A program made the translations under genes and the position numbers. Shown piece by piece: positions 528-63,025 of a DNA stretch of 64,000 nucleotides. This DNA comes from Heteronotia binoei. Its lineage: Eukaryota. Position 1 is the stretch's first letter; each line of letters begins with the position of its first letter. Location: assembly GCF_032191835.1 (NCBI RefSeq), contig NC_083233.1:84568001-84632000 (forward strand). Direction: 5' to 3'. Below the pieces are notes generated by a model. It saw only the letters and a list, made by a program, of their open reading frames with translations, did not search any database and was not told the DNA's origin.

Positions 528-3500
528 ATGTGGGCGCTGCGGGGCCTGGGGCGGGCGTGGAGGGGCGCGGGGGCGCTGCGGGGCTTCTCCTGCTGGAGCT
601 GCGGCCGGCCCTTCCCCCCGCTCTCCGCCGCGGCGCCTCCCCGCTTCTGCCCGGCCTGCCAAGCCCTGCAGCCCCCGGACGCCGCCGCCGACCTCTTCCG
701 CCTCCTCGGGTGGTGCGTCTGGGGGGGGGGGGTCCCCCGGTTTGGAGGTCCTCCCCCCCCCTTCAGGGTGGTCAGAAAGCGGGGGAGGGGAGGGGAATGT
801 CTGCCGGGAACTCTGCTATTCCCTGGGGAGATTTATTCCCATAGAAAATAATGGAGAATTGATCCGCAGGTATCTGGGGCTCTGGGGGGGCTGCTTTTTG
901 GGGTAGAGGCACCAAATTTTCAGTATAGCATCTTGTGCCTCTCCCCAAAATATCTCCCAAGTTTCAAAAGGATTGGACCAGGGGGTCCAATTCTATGAGT
1001 CCCAAAAGAAGGTGACCCCTATCCTTCATTATTTCCTATGGAAAGAAGGCATTTAAAAGGCGTGCCGTCTCTTTAAATGTGATGACCAGAACTCCCTTGG
1101 AGTTCAATTATGCTTGTCACAGCCTTGATCTTGGCTCCACCCCCAAAGTCTCCTGGCTCCACCCCCAAAGTCCCCAGATATTTCTTGAATTGGACTTAGC
1201 AACCCTAGGGGAGGGTGCCGGGGGAGGGAGGGCACCTAAAAGGGGAGGAGGGCATGGAGGGGAGGGCACCTAAGGGGGGAGGAGGGCATGGGAGGGAGGG
1301 CACCAGGGGGGGAGGGTGCCGGAGGGAGGAGGGCATAAGGGCAGGGCGCCAGAGGGGGGAGGGTGCCAGAGTGGGGAGGAGGGCGCTGGAGGGGGGAGGG
1401 CGTGGGGGGGAGTTCGCCAGAGGGGGGAGGGCGCCTGAGGGGATCCCTCCCTCCCCCCTCCTCACAGACTGACGCCCCTCTCTCTGCTCCCCCCCCCCCC
1501 CGCAGCCCACGCACCTTCCGGCTGGACGAGGCCGAACTCCAGCAGCGGTTCCGCAGCCTCCAGCGCCGCCTCCACCCAGACCTCTTCAGCCGCAGGCCCC
1601 AGGTCGGGAGGGGAGATGTGGGGGTGGGGGGGGGGAGGGAGGGAGAGGGACTGACCATGCTCTTTTCTCCCCTCTTCCCAGACGGAGCAGGGCTTCTCGG
1701 AGCAGCACTCGGCGCTGGTCAACACGGCCTACAGCACCCTCCGCACCCCCCTCAGCCGCGGACTCTACCTAGTGAGCTCCACCACCATCCTGGGGGGGAG
1801 GGGCGGGGGGCATGAGGAGGCCTCCCGGGAGGGGGGGCAGCGGTGGGGGAGGTCCAGCATATCAGGCCCAGGGGGTGGGGTGGGGGCTCTTCGGTGCCCG
1901 CCAGCAACTGGTGCCAGGCAGGGGTCAGACAGCTGAGCCACCTCACCCCACCCTCAAGCAGCGGCGGGGGGAGGGTCTGGGCGGCCCACCAAGGGGGGTG
2001 GGTTCAGGGCACCCCCTCCAGCCCTGAAGGGACACCAGTGCAGAGCTTCCCGGCTGTTGTCCGCCTTACTGAGATCAGATAGAAGAACCCAGAGCTCCAC
2101 AGTCCAGCTCAAGACAACGCAGAACCTGGGGAAGCAAAACATTAAGCAGAAATTTTTGTTTTTCAACGTTTATATAAGTTGTGATTCCATAATGAACAAC
2201 AGCTGCACAGTAGAAACTGACTTGTGTTTATCAAAGAATTCAGGTTTTCAGGGCTGGTAACATCATTAGGGTTTGTAGAATCTTTCGGGATCAGGTGCCG
2301 TGTTCTACTGGAGAAAGTTTTCCTTCCAGACGTTTCGTTCTCAGCTGTGGAGATGAGGATGTTCTCCGCAGCTGAGAACGAAACGTCTGGAAGGAAAACT
2401 TTCTCCAGTAGAACATGGCACTTGATCCCGAAAGATTCTACAAACCCTAATGACTTGTGTTTGTCTAGCCTCTAGTACTTTCCAAAGCACAAAACACCAT
2501 ATAACTATTGTGACCAAAGTTCAAAACTCCTTTTGTAAAGTCCACAAGTCAGCAGCAGTTCCCTGCTGGAAGCCCTCCGGTGTGTGCACGGAAATGTCGA
2601 GGATGCAAGAGGAACCGGTTTCAGTCCTAAGACCTTCTTCAGCTATGGCTTCACAGCCCAAATGCGGTATTATTCTTGGAAGCAGCACTCTAGTCGAGCA
2701 GTGTCCTAAAACTCTCCCAGCTATACCAGGTCACAATAACAATGTGGTGTTTTGTACTTAGGAAAATATTAGACAAACACAGGTCAATTTGCTCTGTGTA
2801 ACTGTTGCTTATTATGGAATAATTTCTTATATAAATGTTGAAAAAGAGTAATTTCTATTTAATGTTTTGATGCCACGTGGTTGAGCTGTCCTTTATGCAG
2901 TCTGTATCTCCGGTACCTGGCATTATGTGACCTGGCTTGACAAAGTGGCATTTATGTCAAACCCAGCCATGTAACAAATGACATAGAGGGTTCGTGTCAG
3001 CGGAAACTACAAAACAGTCGACTGTGGCAGCTCTTTACAGAGGCACTCCCTTAGGGTTAAATGCCTTGCACAGCATCGGGGAGGGTGGCTGCATTTGCAG
3101 GAAAGCCACCTTTAGATGAGGAAGCTCTAAACAGAGTTGTGCTCTTCATTACCAGCTGGAGTTAAATGGGGTGGAGCTGGAGAAAGGAACAGACTGTGAG
3201 GCAGATCCTGAATTCCTCTCAGAAATCATGGAAATTAATGAGAAACTGACAGAAACGAACAATGAAGATGCAACAGAAGAGATGGAAAGCTACATAGCAG
3301 GTTTGGGAGAGGCTTGTGCTAGGAGAGGTTTCTGTGCAGAAACTGTGGAGGTGCTGTTTACTCTAATGGGAAGTCAGAGCTAGCTCTGCATTTATCATTT
3401 TTGCCCATTAACCTGCAGAACAAGTATTGTTGTGTGCAACTCTCTATATGAATTGAAATTTATATAATCCTTATTAACCTGTAAACATTGGACTAGTGAT

Positions 3501-5071
3501 ACATTTGTGTAGAAATCAGTGCCAGCTGTGCTGAAGAAGGAAACCCCCAGTGCAGCCATCATGTTCTATGCAGGAATCATGTGAAGTCATGTCAAGTGGT
3601 TTCCACATCCAGGGGCAGTCAACCCCTGTAGACCAGTGCCATCAACATCAGGGAAAGGCTTCAGCCTCTGTGTCTTGTTGGTCTTCCAGAGGAACTGGCT
3701 GGCCACTGTGTGAGACAGGAGGCTGGACTAGATGGACCCTCACTGGTCTGATCTAGCAAGGCTCTTATGATGCTCTTCTCAGGGGAAGGCCTCTGCCTCT
3801 CTGCCCTGTTGTTGGCCCTCCAGAGGCACTGGCTGGCCACTGTGTGAGACAGGAGGCTGGACTAGATGGACCCTCCCTGGTCTGATCCAGCGGGGTTCTC
3901 TTTATGAGATAATAATAATAATAATAATTTTTTATTTCTATCCCGCCCTCCCCGCCGGGGCAGGCTCAGGGCGGCTCACAACATAAAACACACATTACAT
4001 CAATTATACTTATAAAATAGTTAAAACAATTACAGAGTATTAATGATGGAGTGAGAAAGAATTCCAGGCTGAGCTGATGACATTTGCAGTGTGTGTGTGT
4101 GTGTGTGTGTACACGCACGCACCTGCTGTAATGTTAGACGATCAGAGGACGTTCTTATTTCTAAGTGCCTTAAGTGAGACATTCTTTGTGAAAGCTGTAA
4201 CTTGTTAAAGCCTAGCGGCTTCCTTCATGTTCAAAGCACACATTTCTCGCTGTTTTAGCTACCTTGGAAGCTCCCCACTGACTTTCCCCAGATCTCTTTT
4301 CGCAGCATTGGTGAGGCTGAAAGTGCCTATAATCTGAATTCCATTTCTCTCTTATTTGTTCCCAACTAGCTAAACAAGAGGAGCTGGCCAAAGATGTAGG
4401 CCAAGCCTTTGACCAAGGTAGGTCATTCCCACCCTTCCTCTACAAGGGCTTGTCAGATGCGCTGCTGCATTCACGGGGCTTGTGAGCCAGTCTGGACTGC
4501 AGGTAGCGGGAAATCCTTGGCACTTGTGCCATTGTGCTTGCTTGCTTTCCTCTTGTGAATACATACAACAGGGCACATATTAGGTAGTTCTGCTAGATGT
4601 AGGAGTAAGTTTGTACAGAAATGCCTTCTGGCAAGAGCAGCTCAGTTCCAAAAGTGATTGAATTGCTGTGTTGGTTCCTGTCACTGTATACAAATGCAGA
4701 GAGAGAGAGAGATCTGATGAGCTTTTGGATCGATAGGCCCTGACTGTCAAGGTAGAGTATCTGGTTTTAAGTCTTGTCTGTATTTTTAGCCAGTTCATAT
4801 TGAAATTGTAATTTGTTCTTAACCATTTTAATTGTTGGATCTCTGATGTCAGCCTGCTTTGCAGGAAAAGGCCAGGATATAAGCCAAATAAAATAAATGA
4901 ATAAATGTATGTATGGAAAAGCAACATAGAAATGTGTAAATGACATTTTTAAAACCCTGCTTTTTTCCTTGAATTGCAGATGATTTTCAGAAAGCAAAAA
5001 AAATATTGGCCAAAATGAAATATTTTGCCAACCTGGAAGAAAAGGTGAAGAAGAAAAAGCTCCCCTCCTAA
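528..5071 (+). CDS. HSCB: Iron-sulfur cluster co-chaperone HscB (HSC20), 6 exons, 218 aa
   Basis: Exons 528-712, 1506-1602, 1682-1771, 3156-3300, 4370-4417, 4980-5071, all GT-AG with compatible phases (657 nt). Contains the CWSC...CPAC tetracysteine motif, a J-domain with HPD (RRLHPDLFS), EFLSEIMEINEKL and the C-terminal KMKYFANLEEK. Internal exon sizes 97/90/145/48 match human HSCB. Confidence 0.96.
730..1206. mobile_element. Non-autonomous DNA transposon of the same family in HSCB intron 1
   Basis: The 3' part duplicates 1-134 and ends TTAGCAACCCTA; the left boundary is approximate. Confidence 0.5.
2263..2453. repeat. Long inverted repeat (about 91-bp arms, 9-nt loop), Penelope-like
   Basis: TCATTAGGGTTTGTAGAATC... 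pairs with ...GATTCTACAAACCCTAATGA with about 3 mismatches; contains the GACGTTTCG/CGAAACGTC motif typical of Penelope pseudo-LTRs. Confidence 0.75.
3655..3990. mobile_element. Two tandem CR1-type 3' ends (+) followed by an L2-type 3' tail (-)
   Basis: Duplicated ...GGCCACTGTGTGAGACAGGAGGCTGGACTAGATGGACCCTC...; then (AAT)n and CCCGCCCTCCCC...CTCAGGGCGGCTCACAAC, the reverse complement of the L2 tail seen at 9384-9446. Confidence 0.6.
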
Positions 5072-55003: not shown

Positions 55004-55272
55004 GCCCCGTGGCGCAGGGTGGTAAAGCTGCAGCACTGCAAGTCGGAGCCCTCTGCTCATGACCTGAGTTCAATCCCGGCGGAAGCTGGGTTCAGGTAGC
55101 CGGCTCCAGGTTGACTCAGCCTTCCATCCTTCCGAGGTCGGTAAAATGAGTACCCAGCTTGTTTGGCGGGGGGGGAATGTAGATGACTGGGGAAGGCAAT
55201 GGCAAACCACCCCGGGAAAAGTCTGCCGTGAAAACGTGAAAGCAACGTCACCCCAGAGTTGGAAACGACTGG
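55004..55272 (+). mobile_element. Sauria-like SINE, 5' part; the 3' end resumes at 61102-61132 after the DIRS insertion
   Basis: Colinear with the intact copy at 47561-47866, broken between GACTGG and TGCTTGC. Confidence 0.88.
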
Positions 55273-55673
55273 ATCTTCTTCGTGGTCTCTGTGCATCACA
55301 CTGATGGGAGTAGGCGCCAGCGCCGATCTCGATCGGTAAACTTCAAAAGCTGCGGATTTCCGCGCCGACGTCCCAGTGCGCATGCCCGGGCCCCCCCCCC
55401 CGCGCATGCTCACTGGGACAGGAGCGGACATCCCGCCAGTTCTCTTCTGACCGCCGCGCTGATCAGTCGATCTTCTCTGCTACGGTCGGTGAACTTACCC
55501 TTGGATAATAATTTTTTCTTCTATTCTTCTTAGTTAGATAGTTGTAGTTATAGTTGTCGTTATAGTGTAGTTTTAGATAGTTAGTAATAGTTGCGGGAGA
55601 GCGGGGGAGTTTTTCCCGCCCTTCGGGGCCCCCTCTCCCTACTTTCGTTTTTCCCGCCGTTCGTTTCCCTCGT

Positions 55674-57800
55674 ATGGAAAGACGGTGGGGGTTCTTTCGC
55701 CGCTGCTCCTCGTGCGGGAGTAAAATCGCCCCTCCGGACGGGCACGAACTGTGTTTGCTGTGCCTGGGCGAGAGGCACCGTCCTGACTCCTGTCCTCATT
55801 GCGCCAAGTTTTCGCGCCAAACGAGGAAGAACAGGGCAGCCCGACTTGCAGCGGCACTGATGGAGCAGGCTCTTTCCCCTCGTCGCCAGCAGGCTGAGCA
55901 GGCGGAACAGCCCTCCGGTCATTCCGACCAGTCGGCACCGAAGTCGGTCGACACCGACCAGACCCCTCCCGACACCGACCGCCCTAAGAAAAAGCCGGGC
56001 GATGCGGTAACCTCGGGATCCTCGACGCCAGCTAAACGGCGCAAGGAGGAGAAAGGGGCATCAGCTGTAAAGGGGAAGAAGGACAAGAAACAGAGACACA
56101 AATCGGCGCCGCTCTCCGCGCCGGTGTCTCCCGTGGACCCTACGGCTCCGATAGTCCCTCCGCTAAAGCTCTTCGCGTCCCCGATACGCCACTCCGACAC
56201 TCCTTTAGACTCGAGGTCGACGCAGCTGGTCATTTCGGACTCTGATTCGGACATAGAATCGGGCCAGAGGGTCGGTACCGACCGCAGCCCTCTCGGCCGA
56301 AGCACCCCTCGACAGCGAAGCCCACTGGTCAGACCGAGTGATCGGCCCCGAGACCGTTCAGCCAGCAGGTCACGATCTCCTCTCGGCAAGGACGAAGGCC
56401 GATCGCCTCGTGGAGCCCCGTCCCACGTCCCATGGGACCAGAGGCAATGGCAGTATTTGTATGGGGCTTACCCAGTACAACCTCATTACCCATGGCTGCC
56501 GCCGCGACAACCCGAATGGGACCAAGCTTCTGAGACATCTTACCGGTCCCGCACGTCTTTTCGCACGGTGAAGACGGCACCGTCGGCGTCGGTGTCGAAA
56601 CCCCTAGAGCCACGCACGAAGGAGCACGACTTCGCCCCACCGTTAAAGCCGAGGTCGACCCCGACAGCCCCAGCATCCCCATCGAAGCCGGTGCAGCCAT
56701 CGGACTTGTCCGACTCCCCGGACGAGTCTCCCAGGTCGCCGGGGGGTTCGTCTCCTGACGGAGGACCTTCGTCGCCGGACGAGCCATCGCCACCGGGAAA
56801 GACCTCGGACGAACAGCCGATCTCGCCATCGGAGGACCTCAAGTCCTACGGCGACTTAGTAAAGCGGATGGCTCACACCCTCTCGCTCCCGACGGTCCAG
56901 CCACAACCGGTCGTTACCGATACGGTTTTCGACATCGTGCAACAGGACACTTCCACCGCTGTGGCACTGCCTCTGACCAATGTTATGTTGCAGACTGCCA
57001 AGTCCTCATGGGACAAGCCGGCGTCCACGCCTGTGTCCTCTCGCAGGCTGGACCATATGTACAGGATCCAGGAGTCATCAGCAGAGTTCCTGTACGTGCA
57101 CCCGAGACCGAACTCAGTGGTAGTGTCCTCTTCGTCAAAGGCGAAGAAGACCCATTCCACGCCCCCCGATAAGGAGGGTAGGAAACTGGATGCAATAGGA
57201 AGACGGCTTTACACCACAGGCTCACTGGGAGTCAAAGTTGCAAACTACGCAGCCTGTATGGGCAGATATCAATATGCCCTATGGGACCAGGTCTCCACCA
57301 TTCTTGGTTCCATCCCGGAGCAGGCGAAGGCCTCACTGAGAAAGCTGCAAAAGGAGGGCATGGCCCTCGCAAAACAGCAGCTGAACTCAGCAAAACACTC
57401 GGGGGACACGTGCGCCAAAACATTGACCACTGCTATCGCCCTCCGCAGACATTCCTGGCTCCGTTCCACGGCACTGCAACACGACACGCAGGCTTATGTG
57501 GAGGATCTACCGTTCGATGGCTCGGGATTGTTTAGCTCAAACACGGACTCGGTCTTGCAAGAGTTAGACAAAAGTATAAAGACATCTCGGAACCTGGGAG
57601 TAACAAGCCCCCGCACTCCAGCCAAGAGACAGTGGCCAAAGACGTGGCACAAGAAGCCCTACTCAAAGTCGCCAGAGCGGCAATGGCGCTCCAAGCAGCC
57701 AGCTTTTCCGCGGCCCCAGTACCAGCAGAAACCTAAGTACTCGCCACCCTCTACCCAGGTACCCAGGCAGAAGGGTTCCAAACAAAAGCAGGGCCTTTGA
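55674..57800 (+). CDS. DIRS ORF1 (gag-like, 708 aa): N-terminal Cys/His zinc finger, low-complexity middle, LAP2alpha-like C-terminal domain
   Basis: CSSC...HELCLLCLG..H....CPHC; the C-terminal ...TAIALRRHSWLRS...EDLPFDGSGLF is typical of vertebrate DIRS gag. Confidence 0.9.
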   Translation: MERRWGFFRRCSSCGSKIAPPDGHELCLLCLGERHRPDSCPHCAKFSRQTRKNRAARLAAALMEQALSPRRQQAEQAEQPSGHSDQSAPKSVDTDQTPPDTDRPKKKPGDAVTSGSSTPAKRRKEEKGASAVKGKKDKKQRHKSAPLSAPVSPVDPTAPIVPPLKLFASPIRHSDTPLDSRSTQLVISDSDSDIESGQRVGTDRSPLGRSTPRQRSPLVRPSDRPRDRSASRSRSPLGKDEGRSPRGAPSHVPWDQRQWQYLYGAYPVQPHYPWLPPRQPEWDQASETSYRSRTSFRTVKTAPSASVSKPLEPRTKEHDFAPPLKPRSTPTAPASPSKPVQPSDLSDSPDESPRSPGGSSPDGGPSSPDEPSPPGKTSDEQPISPSEDLKSYGDLVKRMAHTLSLPTVQPQPVVTDTVFDIVQQDTSTAVALPLTNVMLQTAKSSWDKPASTPVSSRRLDHMYRIQESSAEFLYVHPRPNSVVVSSSSKAKKTHSTPPDKEGRKLDAIGRRLYTTGSLGVKVANYAACMGRYQYALWDQVSTILGSIPEQAKASLRKLQKEGMALAKQQLNSAKHSGDTCAKTLTTAIALRRHSWLRSTALQHDTQAYVEDLPFDGSGLFSSNTDSVLQELDKSIKTSRNLGVTSPRTPAKRQWPKTWHKKPYSKSPERQWRSKQPAFPRPQYQQKPKYSPPSTQVPRQKGSKQKQGL

Positions 57801-59688
57801 CTGCCTCCCGCCCCTGTATGGCCCTGTGGACTTGCACAGTATCCGGTTGGCACGTTTTCTCCCTGCCTGGGCCCGCATCACGTCGGACCGCTGGGTGCTG
57901 TCAATTATTCAACAGGGCTATGGGATAGAGTTTACCAACCCCCCACCCACCCCGACTTTCGTTTACACCCCTCCTTCGCAAACCCTCCGGGAAGAAGTAT
58001 GCTCCCTCCTCGACAAGGCCGCGATCGAGAGGGTCCCTACGCACCAGCTCCGGCGTGGCTTCTACTCCCGATATTTTGCAGTCCCGAAACGGGACGGGGG
58101 CCTTCGGCCAATTATGGACCTACGGGCCTTGAACCGATTCGTAAGATGCGACAAGTTCAGGATGACAACCCTGCAGTATATCCTCCCGCTGCTGGGACAA
58201 GGGGACTGGATGGCCACGCTCGATCTAAAGGACGCATATTTTCATATATCGATTCATCCCTTCCACAGACAGTTCCTCCGCTTCACAATTGGAGAGGAGC
58301 ACTTCCAATACAGGGCTCTTCCCTTTGGGCTATGCACGGCCCCTCGGGTGTTCACCAAGGCGATGGTGGTGATTGCCGCTCACTTGAGACAGCAAGGGGT
58401 AACACTCTTCCCGTACATCGACGATTGGCTCCTGGTGGCGGAGTCCAGGGAGTCCTTGCTGCGGCACATAGAAATCACCCTTGCCCTGGTGGAAGAACTG
58501 GGACTCCAAATAAACCAGAAGAAGTCCCATCTCCAGCCCGCGCAACGCGTGCAATTCATAGGGGCGATATTGGATTCAAGGGAGTGCAAGGCATTCCTCC
58601 CTCCAGACCGCGCGAATGCCATCGTGCGAACAGTAGCGGCTTTCCGGCAGAATCCCGTGGTCTCAGCACAGAAGGTCCAGAGACTGTTAGGACTTATGGC
58701 AGCCACCACGGCGGTGCTCCCCTTCGCAAGGCTGAGAATGCGGACTCTACAGCTTTGATTCTTGAGGAGCTTCAAATGCAACCTGGAGCCGTACTCCAGA
58801 CTCCTAACGGTACCGCCGGAGGTGCTGGAGTCCCTAAGCTGGTGGGGTCAGAAACAGTACCTAGTGGTGGGAGCCCCCTTCCACAAACCAGTACCAGTGC
58901 TAACGATCACAACGGACGCATCCCTATGGGGCTGGGGTGCCCACATGGGAGGAATATGTGTGGGGGACAGGTGGCCGAGTCGCTACAGTCAACAGCACAT
59001 CAACCTGCTGGAGCTCCTGGCCATCTTCCACGCCATCTTCTCCTTCCAGACTCTTCTGAAGGGAAAAGCAGTAGCGGTGTTGACCGACAACACCACAGCG
59101 GTGGCGTACGTCAACAGGCAAGGGGGGACGGTGTCCCGCAACCTTTGCAAATTGGCCATCTCGCTGTGGGAGCTGTGCAGATCGCTGGGGGTCTCCCTAC
59201 AGGCAGCCCACCTGCCGGGAGTGAACAATGTGCAGGCAGATTTCCTCAGTCGCGGAGGAGCCCTGTCTCACGAGTGGGAACTGAACTCAGAGTTCCTGGA
59301 TCCGGTCTTCCGCAGCTGGGGGACACCGGAGCTGGACGTGTTTGCTACGAGGCACAATGCGAAGTGCGACCTGTTTTGCTGCAGAGGGGGAGCGGACCCC
59401 TTGGCCCTCGGGGACGGTCTCCTAATCCCCTGGACCCACCATACAGTGTATCTGTTCCCGCCCATCCCATTGCTAACCAAGGTCGTGCAGAAACTTCTAC
59501 GGGAGCGCCCACAGGGGATCTTGGTGACGCCATGGTGGCCGAGACAACACTGGTTCCCCTTGGTCCTACGACTGGCCAAGGGGAGGTATTACCGATTCCC
59601 ACAGGCCCCGGACCTTCTCCTCTCCTACCAGGGCAGGATCCTCCATCACGATGTGCCGCACCTCAGGCTGACGGCATGGCGCCTGTGA
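57799..59688 (+). CDS. DIRS pol: reverse transcriptase, RNase H and methyltransferase-like domain; one in-frame TGA at 58756-58758
   Basis: LDLKDAYF, LPFGL and PYIDDWLL (RT); TTDASLWGWGAH and DNTTAVAYVNRQGGT (RNase H); LDVFA and YLFPP (MT-like). The two ORF-track pieces are in the same frame. Confidence 0.9.
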
Positions 59689-60701
59689 TTTCGGACAGGG
59701 CGCAGTTTGTCATAATGAACGCGTGGAAGGCATCTACGAGGAAGTCATACGCAGCTAAGTGGGCGAAGTTTGCGGAGTTCGCGGCCAGTCGCTCCGTACC
59801 TCCCAGTGGAGCGGGACTGCCCGTGATTTTTGATTTCCTGATTGTGCTGCTGGACAAGGGCCTCGCCCAATCGTCCGTGCGGGTTTACCTGGCGGCCATT
59901 TCGGCACAACATCAGAATATAGAGGGCCGGTCGGTTTTCACGCATCCGGACACAAAGCGGTTCCTCAAGGGCATGACGAGACTGTACCCGGCAGTTCGGA
60001 GCCCTGCCCCAGCCTGGGACTTGCCCCTGGTCCTGAGGGCACTAACGGGAAGACCTTTTGAGCCTATGGCCTCCTGCTCTCCTCACCTATTGGCCTGGAA
60101 AACAGCCTTTTTGGTGGCCATCACCTCGGCGAGGAGGGTGGGGGAGCTGGCGGCGCTGCGCTGCGATGCCCCCTACCTTAATTTCTCAGCGGATGGGGTG
60201 ATGCTCCGCCCTGACGTTAAGTTCCTACCGAAGGTGGTATCCCCGTTTCACCTGAATTCGGAAATATTTCTGCCGGTTTATTTCCCGTTGCCGGCTAATG
60301 ACTCAGAACGGCGCCTTCACGCCCTGGATGTTAAACGGGCGCTATCTTTCTATCTTCACCGCACAAGTCAGTCGCGGAGAGACCCCAGACTGTTTGTATC
60401 GTACGCTGGACCCTCCACGGGCCTGCGGATCTCCTCGCAGCGCTTGTCCAAATGGATTACGGGGGCGATCCGCCTGTGCTACATGCTCCACAAGAGGCCG
60501 CTGCCCGGCCCTCTACGGGCTCATTCCACGCGAGCTATGGCAGCATCGGCTGCGTTCATGAAGGGAGTGGCCCTGCAGGACATCTGTAAAGCTGCCACAT
60601 GGGCATCAGCTCACACCTTCGTGACACACTACGCGCTGGACCTGGGGCAGAGACGAGCTTCCGCTGTGGGCCACGCTGTGTTGCAGTCCGTCTCCTCGTG
60701 A
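57999..60701 (+). CDS. DIRS tyrosine recombinase ORF (YR domain from about 59686; N-terminal part overlaps pol)
   Basis: Catalytic pattern SARRVGEL, AHSTRA, ATWAS and THYALD; 900 codons open from the ATG at 57999. Confidence 0.92.
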   Translation: MLPPRQGRDREGPYAPAPAWLLLPIFCSPETGRGPSANYGPTGLEPIRKMRQVQDDNPAVYPPAAGTRGLDGHARSKGRIFSYIDSSLPQTVPPLHNWRGALPIQGSSLWAMHGPSGVHQGDGGDCRSLETARGNTLPVHRRLAPGGGVQGVLAAAHRNHPCPGGRTGTPNKPEEVPSPARATRAIHRGDIGFKGVQGIPPSRPRECHRANSSGFPAESRGLSTEGPETVRTYGSHHGGAPLRKAENADSTALILEELQMQPGAVLQTPNGTAGGAGVPKLVGSETVPSGGSPLPQTSTSANDHNGRIPMGLGCPHGRNMCGGQVAESLQSTAHQPAGAPGHLPRHLLLPDSSEGKSSSGVDRQHHSGGVRQQARGDGVPQPLQIGHLAVGAVQIAGGLPTGSPPAGSEQCAGRFPQSRRSPVSRVGTELRVPGSGLPQLGDTGAGRVCYEAQCEVRPVLLQRGSGPLGPRGRSPNPLDPPYSVSVPAHPIANQGRAETSTGAPTGDLGDAMVAETTLVPLGPTTGQGEVLPIPTGPGPSPLLPGQDPPSRCAAPQADGMAPVISDRAQFVIMNAWKASTRKSYAAKWAKFAEFAASRSVPPSGAGLPVIFDFLIVLLDKGLAQSSVRVYLAAISAQHQNIEGRSVFTHPDTKRFLKGMTRLYPAVRSPAPAWDLPLVLRALTGRPFEPMASCSPHLLAWKTAFLVAITSARRVGELAALRCDAPYLNFSADGVMLRPDVKFLPKVVSPFHLNSEIFLPVYFPLPANDSERRLHALDVKRALSFYLHRTSQSRRDPRLFVSYAGPSTGLRISSQRLSKWITGAIRLCYMLHKRPLPGPLRAHSTRAMAASAAFMKGVALQDICKAATWASAHTFVTHYALDLGQRRASAVGHAVLQSVSS

Positions 60702-62204
60702 TGGACCGTCGCACCCGCCTCCAGGTAGGCTTGAGCTTGCTAGTCTCCCATCAGTGTGATGCACAGAGACCACGAAGAAGATAAACAGGTTTCCTACCTG
60801 TAACTGATGATCTTCGAGTGGTCATCTGTGCAGTCACACTACCCGCCCGACCTTCCCCGCTGCTGACGGTCCCTCCTGAGGGGCTAACGTGGCGGTCAGA
60901 AGGAACTGGCGGGATGTCCGCTCCTGTCCCAGTGAGCATGCGCGGGGGGGGGGGGCCCGGGCATGCGCACTGGGACGTCGGCGCGGAAATCCGCAGCTTT
61001 TGAAGTTTACCGATCGAGATCGGCGCTGGCGCCTACTCCCATCAGTGTGACTGCACAGATGACCACTCGAAGATCATCAGTTACAGGTAGGAAACCTGTT
61101 TTGCTTGCCCAGGGGACTACCTTTACCTTTTTAATCTACTGCTCACTGCACTCCCCTCTCCCCGCCAGAAGTGGTGATGGGTGTGTGTGTGTGAGAGAGA
61201 AAATACTTATTTGTGAGGTGCGCTGTGGCTGAGCAGACAGTTAAACACTCTTCTGCATGAGCAGCATGGTGGAACAGCCCCTCTCCACCCATTTGCAGCC
61301 TGTCTTTGTGGATGGGTGTAGAAATCTGGTTTTATCGATTTGGGAATGCTGCCTTGAAGTGGTGGGCTGGTCTGTGCTCCCCCCCACCCTCAGGGCAACT
61401 GTGTTGACTGTGTGAGTTGTCATGGAATTGCAGGGCATGCAGCAGCGGCATTCCTAGGATGACTGGCTTTCCTCCTCCTCCTCCTCCTCCTCTTGCAATT
61501 AGTCCCAGGTGTTGGTCATGCAGCCAGTTTGGGGGGCAGTTTGAGGCCAAGTGTCTCACCTCCTTTGCCTCAGGGCAGCGGTGCATGTTTCTGGAGGGGG
61601 CAGGGTTGAAATGATGCTCTTTGCAAATGGAGTGCTCCCCCCAATGCACATAAAAACCATGGAGTAAAACATGCAGCTCAGCCAGTGAAGTCCTTTCTAT
61701 GAATAGGGCTCTTGTTTTTAATTCGATGAGCAGGGAACTTTCCAGCTCTGTTCGCCTCTTTGCAATCTGTCTTTAATTTGCAGGGAGATGCATTCCAGTT
61801 TTTCAGACATGAAACTGTTTAATGGGGTTTTTTTGGCTTCGCTAGAGCTCCAGTTGTGTTAGTTTATCCTGAGACCGAGTATGTCTACTCCTTGCGAAGT
61901 GTAGCCAGGTATACTTTTTGGGCTACTCTTACAGGTTTTTCTTGGGCTCCTTTGGTAGCCCGTTCTTCGTTTCCTGTGGGAAGTAGCCAGCAGGTTCACA
62001 GGTGAGGTTTTTGCCATTGTTGAGTCCTGCTGAAAGTAGAGTGGAGGCACACTGGGCAGTGTGGACTGTTTTTGCCAGAGGACTTTGGGAATGTTGACTT
62101 GCTTGTCAGTGAGCTCAAGTGACCCCAAGAGCCTCCAGCCAGAGGCCGAACTTTCATTTTTGGCCCAGGCGCTGCAGCAGGCGCTGCAGCTCCCTGTTGG
62201 TGGA

Positions 62205-62710: not shown

Positions 62711-63025
62711 CTGGGGGTGGGGGCGGGTCCCTGTTGGTGGATGCTGAGACTGCTGAGCGGGGTTTGGGGAGGCTGACTGGGGGTGCAGTGCTTTGGTGGC
62801 TCCACTCATACTGGGGGTGGGGGCGGGTCCCTGTTGGTGGATGCTGAGACTGCTGAGCGGGGTTTGGGGAGGCTGACTGGGGGTGCAGTGCTTTGGTGGC
62901 TCCACTCATACTGGGGGGGGGGGGCGGGTCCCTGTTGGTGGATGCTGAGACTGCTGAGCGGGGTTTGGGGAGGCTGACTGGGGGTGCAGTGCTTTGGTGG
63001 CTCCACTCATACTGGGGGGGGGGGG
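62711..63025. repeat. 100-bp G-rich tandem repeat, 3 copies
   Basis: CTGGGGG...GCGGGTCCCTGTTGGTGGATGCTGAGACTGCTGAGCGG...CTCCACTCATA starts at about 62711, 62811 and 62911. Confidence 0.9.

What the first reader, a model, noticed from the sequence alone, without database searches (positions are those of the whole stretch)
57792..57810. One stop codon may route DIRS translation into three proteins: termination, +1 frameshift or readthrough
Seen in sequence: gag ends CAG GGC CTT TGA CTG. (1) The pol frame begins at +1 (TTT GAC TGC CTC...) and has no ATG until inside the RT domain. (2) Reading codon by codon in the gag frame from 57801, there is no stop before the ATG at 57999 or anywhere up to 60701, so gag and the recombinase ORF are separated only by this TGA. 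Established knowledge: CUU-UGA-C is the +1 'shifty stop' of bacterial prfB (RF2), Ty1 shifts +1 on a CUU codon, and UGA followed by C is a leaky readthrough context in alphaviruses and some cellular mRNAs. Inference: one heptamer could set the ratio of Gag (708 aa), Gag-RT-RNaseH-MT (about 1337 aa by +1 shift if the internal stop is repaired) and Gag-YR (about 1675 aa by readthrough). This would explain why about 630 codons upstream of the YR domain are kept stop-free. I do not recall this being described for DIRS elements, but could not check the literature.
Basis: partly seen in the sequence, partly recalled or inferred. Interest (0 to 1): 0.85.

Follow-up and report, generated by a model that had tools for sequence, protein, structure and literature searches.

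The report
Three-frame recoding hub at DIRS gag stop
In this reptile-type DIRS1 retrotransposon, and in most of its relatives sampled from other animals, the reverse-transcriptase and recombinase reading frames both begin at the single stop codon that ends gag and lack start codons of their own. The best reading is that one stop codon sends ribosomes three ways (stop, +1 shift, read-through), which I did not find described for these elements.

Summary
The gag frame has no other stop up to 60699, so gag and the 966-codon recombinase (YR) ORF are separated only by TGA 57798. Synonymous shuffling of pol predicts about 12 stops in that frame; none of 20,000 shuffles had zero.

I compared 90 related loci. 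Gag stop, YR ORF in the same frame and pol at +1 is the majority layout: 35 intact families, and 32 of 33 families picked by RT motif alone whose gag lies in the YR frame. The gag stop is TGA or TAG, never TAA, and is never followed by A. CTN follows it more often than expected, and +1-slippery last codons are enriched. No AUG is conserved; the first lies 7 to 542 codons downstream. Three families have no stop, giving one gag-X-YR ORF.

CTT-TGA-C itself is conserved only in the window's subclade (5 of 5). Exceptions exist: an Anolis family with extra stops, a Sceloporus family with gag-TGA-pol in frame, and families with gag in the third frame.

Best reading: dual recoding at the gag stop, confidence about 0.5. 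This copy's pol is broken by one in-frame stop. No prior description was found in the searchable literature, but three key DIRS papers were not available.

The parts
55258..55458 (+). Left terminus and inverted terminal repeat of the DIRS1-like element. The element starts GTT.
   Evidence: 55277-55458 pairs with 60888-61073 (96%, with a 106-nt core 100% complementary). 55258-55310 pairs with the internal complementary region.
55674..57800 (+). gag ORF, 708 aa, ending in a hydrophilic tail ...KQKQGL followed by TGA.
   Evidence: Weak Pfam LAP2alpha match. Homologous to the gag of relatives.
57795..57801 (+). Junction heptamer CTT TGA C, the proposed recoding site: termination, +1 shift (CUU to UUU, next codon GAC) or read-through.
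   Evidence: The identical heptamer occurs in L001, L002, L088 and L089.
57604..59688 (+). pol reading frame (+1 relative to gag) with RT, RNase H and an MT-like region. It is open 194 nt upstream of the gag stop and has no ATG before 58114.
   Evidence: RVT_1 3.5e-27; RT_RNaseH 8.9e-5. Dam at E 0.099, below threshold.
58756..58758 (+). In-frame TGA that interrupts pol in this copy. The copy is not autonomous as it stands.
57801..60701 (+). 966-codon ORF in the gag frame. The X region (57801 to about 59675) is overprinted on pol, rich in Gly and Pro, and has no Pfam match. The tyrosine recombinase part follows.
59676..60698 (+). Tyrosine recombinase domain. The R...HxxR...Y motifs are visible as ARRVGEL, HSTR and THY.
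   Evidence: for the translation; homologues named Tyr recombinase domain-containing, some carrying PF00589 or PF02899. PF00589 at E 0.063 only.
60745..60840 (+). Internal complementary region (ICR), complementary to both termini.
   Evidence: (pairs I2 and I4).
60888..61106 (+). Right inverted terminal repeat and terminus. The element ends CTT.

Best explanation
The window holds a young DIRS1-like tyrosine-recombinase retrotransposon (55258-61106). Its gag stop, UGA at 57798 in the context CUU-UGA-C, is the single entry point to both downstream reading frames.

- Most ribosomes terminate and make Gag.
- A fraction shift +1 with the stop in the A site. The peptidyl-tRNA-Leu re-pairs from CUU to UUU and the next codon is GAC, giving Gag-RT/RNaseH/MT.
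- Another fraction read through the UGA. They translate about 625 codons of a fast-evolving, Gly/Pro-rich region (X) overprinted on pol, whose only visible constraint is the absence of stops. They then reach the recombinase, giving Gag-X-YR.

The element has no protease, so both enzymes would be made as Gag fusions.

What is shown: the ORF geometry, that it is not chance, its conservation and the biases in the stop context. What is inferred: that ribosomes actually shift and read through, and at which nucleotide. In this particular copy pol is cut by an in-frame stop, so the Gag-Pol arm would be truncated.
For: 1. Frame 0 is stop-free over the pol overlap against 11.8 stops expected; 0 of 20,000 shuffles match it.

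2. The same geometry (YR ORF opening at the codon after the gag stop, pol at +1) holds in 35 intact families at no more than 80% amino-acid identity. It also holds in 32 of 33 families that were found by RT motifs alone and have gag in that frame. About 55 stops were expected between the gag stop and the conserved pol Trp; none was seen.

3. No AUG is conserved. The first AUG in the YR ORF lies 7 to 542 codons after the stop (66 in the window, 372 in L088, 196 in L089, 183 in L001). The codon overlapping the conserved Trp is ATG in only 7 of 24 families. The first pol AUG is inside RT.

4. The stop is TGA in 24 families, TAG in 11 and TAA in none. The next base is never A (p about 9e-5). CTN follows in 9 of 35 against 4% expected (p about 1e-5). 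The last sense codon belongs to {CTT, TTT, CCC, AAA, GGG, TCC} in 17 of 35 against 15% expected (p about 4e-6).

5. The window's subclade has CTT TGA C in 5 of 5 members, although the gag tails are only about 36-49% identical.

6. Three families have no stop at all: one 1313-1367-codon ORF whose N-terminal part is homologous to gag (1e-17 to 1e-30). So a Gag-X-YR product is encoded directly there.

7. In close pairs, pol third positions in the overlap diverge almost as fast as third positions in gag and YR. X is therefore kept open rather than kept as a protein sequence.
Against: No translational data were obtained.

The 100 nt after the stop show no stable structure (z = +1.3), unlike the MuLV and antizyme stimulators.

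Half of the families have last codons that cannot re-pair in +1.

Intact relatives reach YR without an open path from the gag stop. Anolis sagrei L087 has 9 further stops. Sceloporus L086 has gag-TGA-pol in frame, and its YR ORF opens about 110 codons later in the -1 frame. Both YR ORFs still lack AUGs for 125-269 codons. About 10 families have gag in the third frame.

The set of slippery codons was defined after seeing the data, and the families are related to one another.

A Gag fusion carrying 625 residues of apparently arbitrary sequence is an unusual product.
Confidence: 0.5

Rival explanations
1. pol is made by a +1 shift. The YR ORF, however, is translated by separate initiation just after the gag stop: termination-reinitiation, an internal entry site, or a near-cognate start such as the CUG that overlaps the conserved pol Trp. 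The product would be X-YR without Gag.
For: In all 24 families that keep the TGG, the YR-frame codon over the conserved pol Trp is NTG: ATG 7, CTG 7, TTG 8, GTG 2. It is CUG in the window. The ORF geometry alone cannot separate reinitiation within a few codons of the stop from read-through.
Against: No AUG is conserved, and ATG at the Trp is at chance frequency. The 20-170 codons between the gag stop and that Trp are stop-free in every type I family, against about 55 stops expected; initiation at the Trp would not require this. Reinitiation after a 700-codon ORF is normally very inefficient (established knowledge). Type II elements fuse gag directly to the YR ORF.
Confidence: 0.2
2. YR is reached from the pol frame by a -1 frameshift somewhere inside pol, giving Gag-Pol'-X'-YR. 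The openness of the YR frame back to the gag stop would be secondary.
For: The YR frame is the -1 frame of pol in every family. In L086, L087 and L090 the AUG-less YR ORF opens 110-225 codons after the gag stop, so entry from pol or an unknown internal entry is needed there. A G GGA AAA heptamer lies in the pol frame at 59061.
Against: Heptamers are few and not positionally conserved among relatives. A shift inside pol does not explain why the YR frame is open right from the gag stop in 32 of 33 unbiased families.
Confidence: 0.12
3. The +1 shift to pol happens upstream of the stop in the 194-nt gag/pol overlap, for example at the UUU-C site (GCU UUU CCG, 57702-57710; compare influenza PA-X). 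On this reading the stop-proximal heptamer matters only for termination or read-through.
For: The pol frame is open 56-515 nt upstream of the gag stop in 34 of 35 families. TTT_C occurs in the overlap of 16 of 34 families, including the window at -93.
Against: The long overlap is explained by the hydrophilic gag tail: 0-1.3 stops are expected in the 15 families computed before the script stopped. TTT_C is absent from L088 and L001, while CTT TGA C is present in 5 of 5. Slippery last codons are enriched at the stop.
Confidence: 0.12
4. Spliced or subgenomic RNAs, not recoding, deliver ribosomes to pol and YR.
For: Unverified first-reader notes on Ngaro elements of the same genome propose gag-donor splicing. 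NCBI gene models join gag to the YR ORF through predicted introns.
Against: Contigs from RNA libraries of related copies run colinear across the gag stop (records at 57666-58079 and 57765-57932), and no supported joint skips it. This is weak evidence, because contigs cannot show absence. Splicing would not need 600 stop-free codons, nor a stop context biased against TAA and against a following A. The gene-model introns look like devices for avoiding stops.
Confidence: 0.06

Closest known systems
DIRS1-like retrotransposons with 'long ORF overlap' (Piednoel et al. 2011, PMC3266345; Xenopus families, PMC9210276)
   Same: ITR and ICR architecture. gag, RT/RH/MT and YR ORFs. The YR ORF extensively overlaps pol, with the catalytic domain in the non-overlapping 3' end. 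Size is about 5.9 kb with NTT termini.
   Different: Those papers record the overlap but say nothing about how pol and YR are translated. They do not note that gag and the YR ORF share a frame across a single stop, or that AUGs are lacking.
Bacterial prfB (RF2) +1 'shifty stop' CUU UGA C, and eukaryotic antizyme UCC UGA U
   Same: A stop codon in the A site with a re-pairing-capable P-site codon and the downstream ORF in +1. The window's heptamer is identical to that of prfB. L005 and L052 have TCC TGA, as antizyme does.
   Different: No Shine-Dalgarno-like or pseudoknot stimulator was found. No autoregulatory logic is evident. Here the 0 frame also continues past the stop.
Yeast Ty1 (CUU AGG C) and Ty3 (GCG AGU U) +1 frameshifting for Gag-Pol
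   Same: A retroelement Gag-Pol made by a +1 shift, and DIRS RT is related to Ty3/gypsy RT. Ty3 shows that a +1 shift need not involve re-pairing, which could cover the families with non-slippery last codons.
   Different: Ty elements pause at a rare sense codon, not at a stop, and have no third ORF in the 0 frame.
Stop-codon read-through for Gag-Pol or replicase (MuLV UAG, alphavirus UGA-C, UGA-CUA type motifs)
   Same: A leaky stop (UGA or UAG), C or CUN after UGA, and an in-frame downstream ORF without an AUG.
   Different: MuLV needs a 3' pseudoknot and none is evident here. Here the read-through arm crosses about 625 codons overprinted on another gene before reaching an enzyme domain.
Arterivirus (PRRSV) -2/-1 frameshifting at one slippery site
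   Same: One site yields three protein products from three frames.
   Different: The mechanism is protein-stimulated -2/-1 slippage at a sense-codon site in an RNA virus. It does not involve a stop codon.

Membership tests
DIRS1-like (DIRS order) YR retrotransposon | Inverted terminal repeats plus an internal complementary region that matches both termini | tested here: met
   ITRs at 55277-55458 and 60888-61073. The ICR at 60745-60840 is complementary to 55258-55310 and to 61044-61106.
DIRS1-like (DIRS order) YR retrotransposon | RT/RNase H of the Ty3/gypsy-related type, with no protease or DDE integrase | tested here: met
   RVT_1 (3.5e-27) and RT_RNaseH (8.9e-5). No protease or integrase family was hit in any ORF.
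DIRS1-like (DIRS order) YR retrotransposon | Tyrosine recombinase ORF at the 3' end | tested here: met
   homologues at E down to 1e-117, some named Tyr recombinase or carrying PF00589 or PF02899. The R, HxxR and Y motifs are visible. Pfam on this copy alone is below threshold (E 0.063).
DIRS1-like (DIRS order) YR retrotransposon | Methyltransferase-like domain after RNase H | tested here: inconclusive
   Dam PF05869 at only E 0.099, below the cutoff. A relative (P0237) carries PF05869.
Shifty-stop +1 programmed frameshift (prfB/antizyme type) | Downstream ORF in the +1 frame, overlapping the stop and without its own start | tested here: met
   for the window; 34 of 35 type I families.
Shifty-stop +1 programmed frameshift (prfB/antizyme type) | P-site codon able to re-pair in +1, next to a poorly terminating stop | tested here: met
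   The window and 4 subclade members have CTT TGA C. Across families this holds in only 17 of 35, which is still enriched over the 15% expected.
Shifty-stop +1 programmed frameshift (prfB/antizyme type) | Cis stimulator (upstream rRNA-pairing element or downstream pseudoknot) | tested here: not met
   the 100 nt after the stop fold no better than shuffles (z = +1.3). Only modest structure appears in some relatives (z -1 to -1.7).
Shifty-stop +1 programmed frameshift (prfB/antizyme type) | Demonstrated trans-frame protein | not testable with these tools
   Needs reporters, ribosome profiling or mass spectrometry.
Programmed stop-codon read-through | Leaky stop identity and 3' context | tested here: met
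   TGA 24, TAG 11, TAA 0. The next base is never A. TGA-C occurs 15 times. CTN follows in 9 of 35 against 4% expected.
Programmed stop-codon read-through | Conserved in-frame ORF directly after the stop, kept open across lineages | tested here: met
   Exceptions are L083, L087 and L086.
Programmed stop-codon read-through | Read-through protein observed | not testable with these tools
   No proteomic or ribosome-profiling data could be reached. The RNA runs were contigs only.

The most novel reading that the evidence does not exclude
A single gag stop codon is an ancient three-way translational switch in DIRS1-like retrotransposons of vertebrates and other animals: terminate, +1 shift to Gag-Pol, or read through to Gag-X-YR. 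The recombinase is reached only by translating about 600 codons of sequence overprinted on pol that is selected merely to stay open. Some lineages have dropped the stop, which makes Gag-X-YR the default product. Others have moved pol in frame with gag.
Probability: 0.45. Interest if true: 0.85.

Novelty: new variant of a known kind. Interest (0 to 1): 0.78.

Why it matters
How DIRS elements translate pol and YR from one full-length RNA has not been explained in the papers I could read. Those papers only record 'overlapping ORFs'.

If the hub model holds:
- It gives a protease-less retroelement a way to set the Gag : Gag-Pol : Gag-YR ratios with one codon.
- It would be a rare eukaryotic case of +1 shifting and read-through competing at the same stop.
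- It would be one of the longest overprinted regions kept open only as a ribosome path.

It also has a practical consequence for annotation. Public gene models split, fuse or misname these ORFs, and knowing the recoding layout would correct that.

Tried and rejected
- The gag protein search in the 5.8-billion-protein set found nothing; low-complexity words swamped it.
- The viral-contig scan gave no relatives.
- RNA structure after the stop: no signal in the window.
- The long opening of the pol frame upstream of the gag stop looked like evidence for an upstream shift site. Synonymous shuffling of gag shows it is a passive result of the hydrophilic tail. The script stopped after 15 families, all consistent.
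- Canonical -1 heptamers in the pol frame are few and not positionally conserved.
- The X region has no Pfam family even at E 5.
- RNA evidence: only three metatranscriptome runs of related organisms hold 7% of the words, and only as contigs. They show colinear coverage of the junction and no supported splice, but they cannot show absence, strand or abundance.
- Literature: no mention of frameshifting or read-through in the DIRS papers held, and the 2016 frameshifting review has no hit for 'DIRS' or 'tyrosine recombinase'.
- Of the three key DIRS papers, Goodwin and Poulter 2001 and Poulter and Butler 2015 are not held, and I did not look up Poulter and Goodwin 2005. Prior mention there cannot be excluded.
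- Some 'type III' loci may be single copies with indels in homopolymer runs of the gag tail. I did not count them as firm exceptions, except the family seen in seven copies.
Full report
**1. What is in the window**

The region 55258-61106 is one DIRS1-like tyrosine-recombinase retrotransposon of 5,849 bp.
- It has inverted terminal repeats at 55277-55458 and 60888-61073, with a 106-nt core that is 100% complementary.
- An internal complementary region at 60745-60840 matches both termini.
- The element starts GTT and ends CTT, as described for the superfamily (PMC3266345).
- It is the only copy in the window.

gag is 55674-57800 (708 aa) with a weak LAP2alpha match. LAP2alpha is also reported for Xenopus DIRS gag (PMC9210276).

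pol lies in the +1 frame. It is open from 57604, has its first ATG at 58114 inside RVT_1, contains RVT_1 and RT_RNaseH, is interrupted by an in-frame TGA at 58756 and ends at 59686.

The gag frame has no stop from 57801 to 60698. Its last 340 codons carry the R...HxxR...Y recombinase motifs. They match proteins named Tyr recombinase at E down to 1e-117. The sequence at the stop is GGC CTT TGA CTG.

**2. Is it more than chance?**

I kept the pol protein and its codon usage and shuffled synonymous codons. The gag frame then carries 11.8 ± 2.9 stops across the overlap, and none of 20,000 shuffles has zero. The third frame has 28 stops, as expected.

An exhaustive profile search with the 966-residue ORF found 8,667 relatives. 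Many are 910-980 aa long and align over nearly the full length. The long ORF is therefore real and widespread.

This part is already known. 'Long ORF overlap' between pol and YR is recorded for half of 28 annotated DIRS1-like elements, with the catalytic domain in the non-overlapping end (PMC3266345).

**3. The junction in relatives**

I fetched DNA for 10 loci through their proteins. They come from Pogona, Anolis sagrei, Sceloporus, other vertebrate assemblies and metagenome or run assemblies. I also fetched 80 loci found only by two RT peptide motifs in metagenome contigs. Those 80 are unbiased with respect to gag and the YR ORF. In each locus I mapped pol by tblastn and read the three frames. 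Clustering at 80% amino-acid identity gave 69 families.

Type I layout (35 intact families, including the window):
- gag lies in the frame one base before pol.
- The YR ORF opens at the very codon after the gag stop and runs 960-1,140 codons.
- Among the motif-selected loci with gag in that frame, 32 of 33 families have no second stop. L083 is the exception.
- With pol kept constant, about 55 stops would be expected between the gag stop and the conserved pol Trp across the 35 families. That sum was computed on families chosen for the layout, so the 32-of-33 count is the unconditioned figure.

Other layouts:
- Three families (L066, L071, L076) have no stop at all. One ORF of 1,313-1,367 codons begins with a region homologous to the gag of L073 (E 1e-17 to 1e-30) and ends with YR, with pol at +1 inside it.
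- About ten families have gag in the third frame, with both other ORFs opening near the gag end. Some of these may be copies with indels in homopolymer runs.
- Some families lack the long overlap.

On a pol tree the window sits in a well-supported group of three with L001 and L002. That group lies inside a 46-family clade that is almost entirely type I.

**4. No start codons**

- In type I families the first AUG of the YR ORF lies 7 to 542 codons after the gag stop. It is more than 150 codons away in 11 of the 35.
- In the window's subclade the values are 66 in the window, 372 in L088, 196 in L089 and 183 in L001.
- Many database proteins begin 'MG', where ATG overlaps a conserved pol Trp codon. 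Across families, however, that codon is ATG 7, CTG 7, TTG 8, GTG 2, so ATG is at chance frequency.
- pol likewise has no conserved AUG.

Entry into both frames from upstream translation is therefore the simplest reading.

**5. Signals at the stop**

All figures below are from the 35 type I families.
- The gag stop is TGA in 24, TAG in 11 and TAA in none. The pol and YR ORFs of the same elements use TAA in 6 of 56 cases (p 0.049).
- The next base is never A (p about 9e-5). TGA-C occurs 15 times.
- CTN follows the stop in 9 families against 4.3% expected (p about 1e-5). This is the class of context known for leaky UGA in alphaviruses and some cellular genes (established knowledge).
- The last sense codon has identical second and third bases in 21 of 35, against 29% expected (p 1.5e-4).
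- It belongs to {CTT, TTT, CCC, AAA, GGG, TCC} in 17 of 35, against 15% expected (p 4e-6).

These tests treat related families as independent, and the codon set was chosen after seeing the data.

The exact heptamer CTT TGA C is present in all five members of the window's subclade: the window, L088, L089, L001 and L002 (Pogona). Their gag tails are only about 36-49% identical.

**6. Where is the +1 shift?**

The pol frame is open a median of 85 codons upstream of the gag stop, against 11 for the third frame. This looked like evidence for an upstream site.

The gag tail is hydrophilic, however (0-18% hydrophobic residues). Shuffling gag synonymously predicts only 0-1.3 stops there in the 15 families computed before the script stopped. 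The overlap is therefore passive.

The stop-proximal site is better supported, but the position is not proven.

**7. What is the X region?**

- It is 625 residues long, with 15% Gly and 14% Pro. Hydrophobic residues make up 21%, against 38% in pol.
- It has no Pfam family even at E 5.
- In related pairs, pol third positions (the first positions of X codons) differ almost as much as third positions in gag and in the YR domain. For example the figures are 0.44 against 0.59 and 0.56, and 0.52 against 0.56 and 0.51.

X therefore looks like a path kept open for ribosomes, or a linker, rather than a conserved domain. The comparisons are near saturation, so weak constraint cannot be excluded.

**8. 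Evidence against, and exceptions**

- The 100 nt after the stop fold no better than shuffled sequence (z +1.3). Some relatives show modest structure.
- Anolis sagrei L087 has TTT TGA C with pol at +1, but nine more stops in the gag frame. Its YR ORF opens 225 codons later.
- Sceloporus L086 has gag-TGA-pol in one frame (AAC TGA GGG), and its YR ORF opens about 110 codons later in the -1 frame. A second copy, L090, shares the junction.
- In both of those families the YR ORF still lacks AUGs for 125-269 codons.
- L072 also has gag-TGA-pol in frame.

The gag stop is thus consistently the gateway to pol, by +1 shift or by read-through. YR, however, can be reached in other ways, perhaps by -1 shifting from pol. 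Canonical -1 heptamers are sparse and not conserved in position.

RNA-library contigs from related organisms (90-99% alike) cover the element colinearly, including across the stop, and no supported joint skips it. These are contigs and cannot exclude rare spliced forms.

**9. Literature**

In the searchable library, DIRS papers describe 'three overlapping ORFs' without a translation mechanism. Searches combining DIRS with frameshifting, read-through, recoding or initiation codon found nothing relevant. The 2016 frameshifting review has no hit for 'DIRS' or 'tyrosine recombinase', and it reports that only 2 of 51 animal LTR elements had pol at +1. Two founding DIRS1 papers are not held and a third was not looked up, so I cannot rule out an earlier remark there.

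Unverified notes from other windows of this genome report the same CTT-TGA-C in further copies and a second family with CAA TGA CTA. I treat them as leads only.

**10. Verdict**

It remains an inference about translation, it is not universal among DIRS1-like elements, and the particular heptamer is lineage-specific. This copy cannot make full-length Gag-Pol, because pol carries an in-frame stop at 58756.

Noticed in passing
L066:183-4256, L071:576-4679, L076:81-4022: DIRS1-like elements in metagenome contigs in which gag runs into the YR ORF with no stop at all, giving one ORF of 1313-1367 codons. pol lies at +1 inside it.
   Followed up: partly
L086:3796-3798 (Sceloporus undulatus assembly); also L072:1801-1803: gag-TGA-pol in the same frame, a layout like MuLV read-through. 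In L086 the AUG-less YR ORF opens about 110 codons later in the -1 frame. A second Sceloporus copy (L090) has the same junction but its gag is shifted upstream.
   Followed up: partly
proteins P0007, P0026, P0161, P0155, P0157: Public annotation gives DIRS ORFs host-gene names (mediator subunit 19 isoform, shieldin subunit 1 isoform, C6orf132 homolog). It also builds 1430-1527-aa models that join gag to the YR ORF through predicted introns skipping the stop region.
   Followed up: partly
window 60718-61106: In three RNA-library runs of related organisms, summed contig depth over the ICR and right ITR is 640-4,660, against about 0-120 over the coding part and 180-456 over the left ITR. Possible causes are many truncated or solo copies, terminal transcripts or small RNAs.
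   Followed up: no
window 62711-63010: Three tandem copies of a G-rich unit of about 100 bp (99-100% identical), about 1.6 kb downstream of the element.
   Followed up: no
L029:4707-4923 and six sister copies (WLWD contigs): A family seen in seven copies in which gag lies in the third frame. The pol and YR ORFs open within 17 nt of each other about 200 nt before the gag stop, next to G and C homopolymer runs. This would need two different shifts at one place.
   Followed up: partly
window 57702-57710: GCT TTT CCG in the gag frame inside the gag/pol overlap. This UUU-C type +1 slip candidate is present in only 3 of 5 members of the window's subclade.
   Followed up: yes
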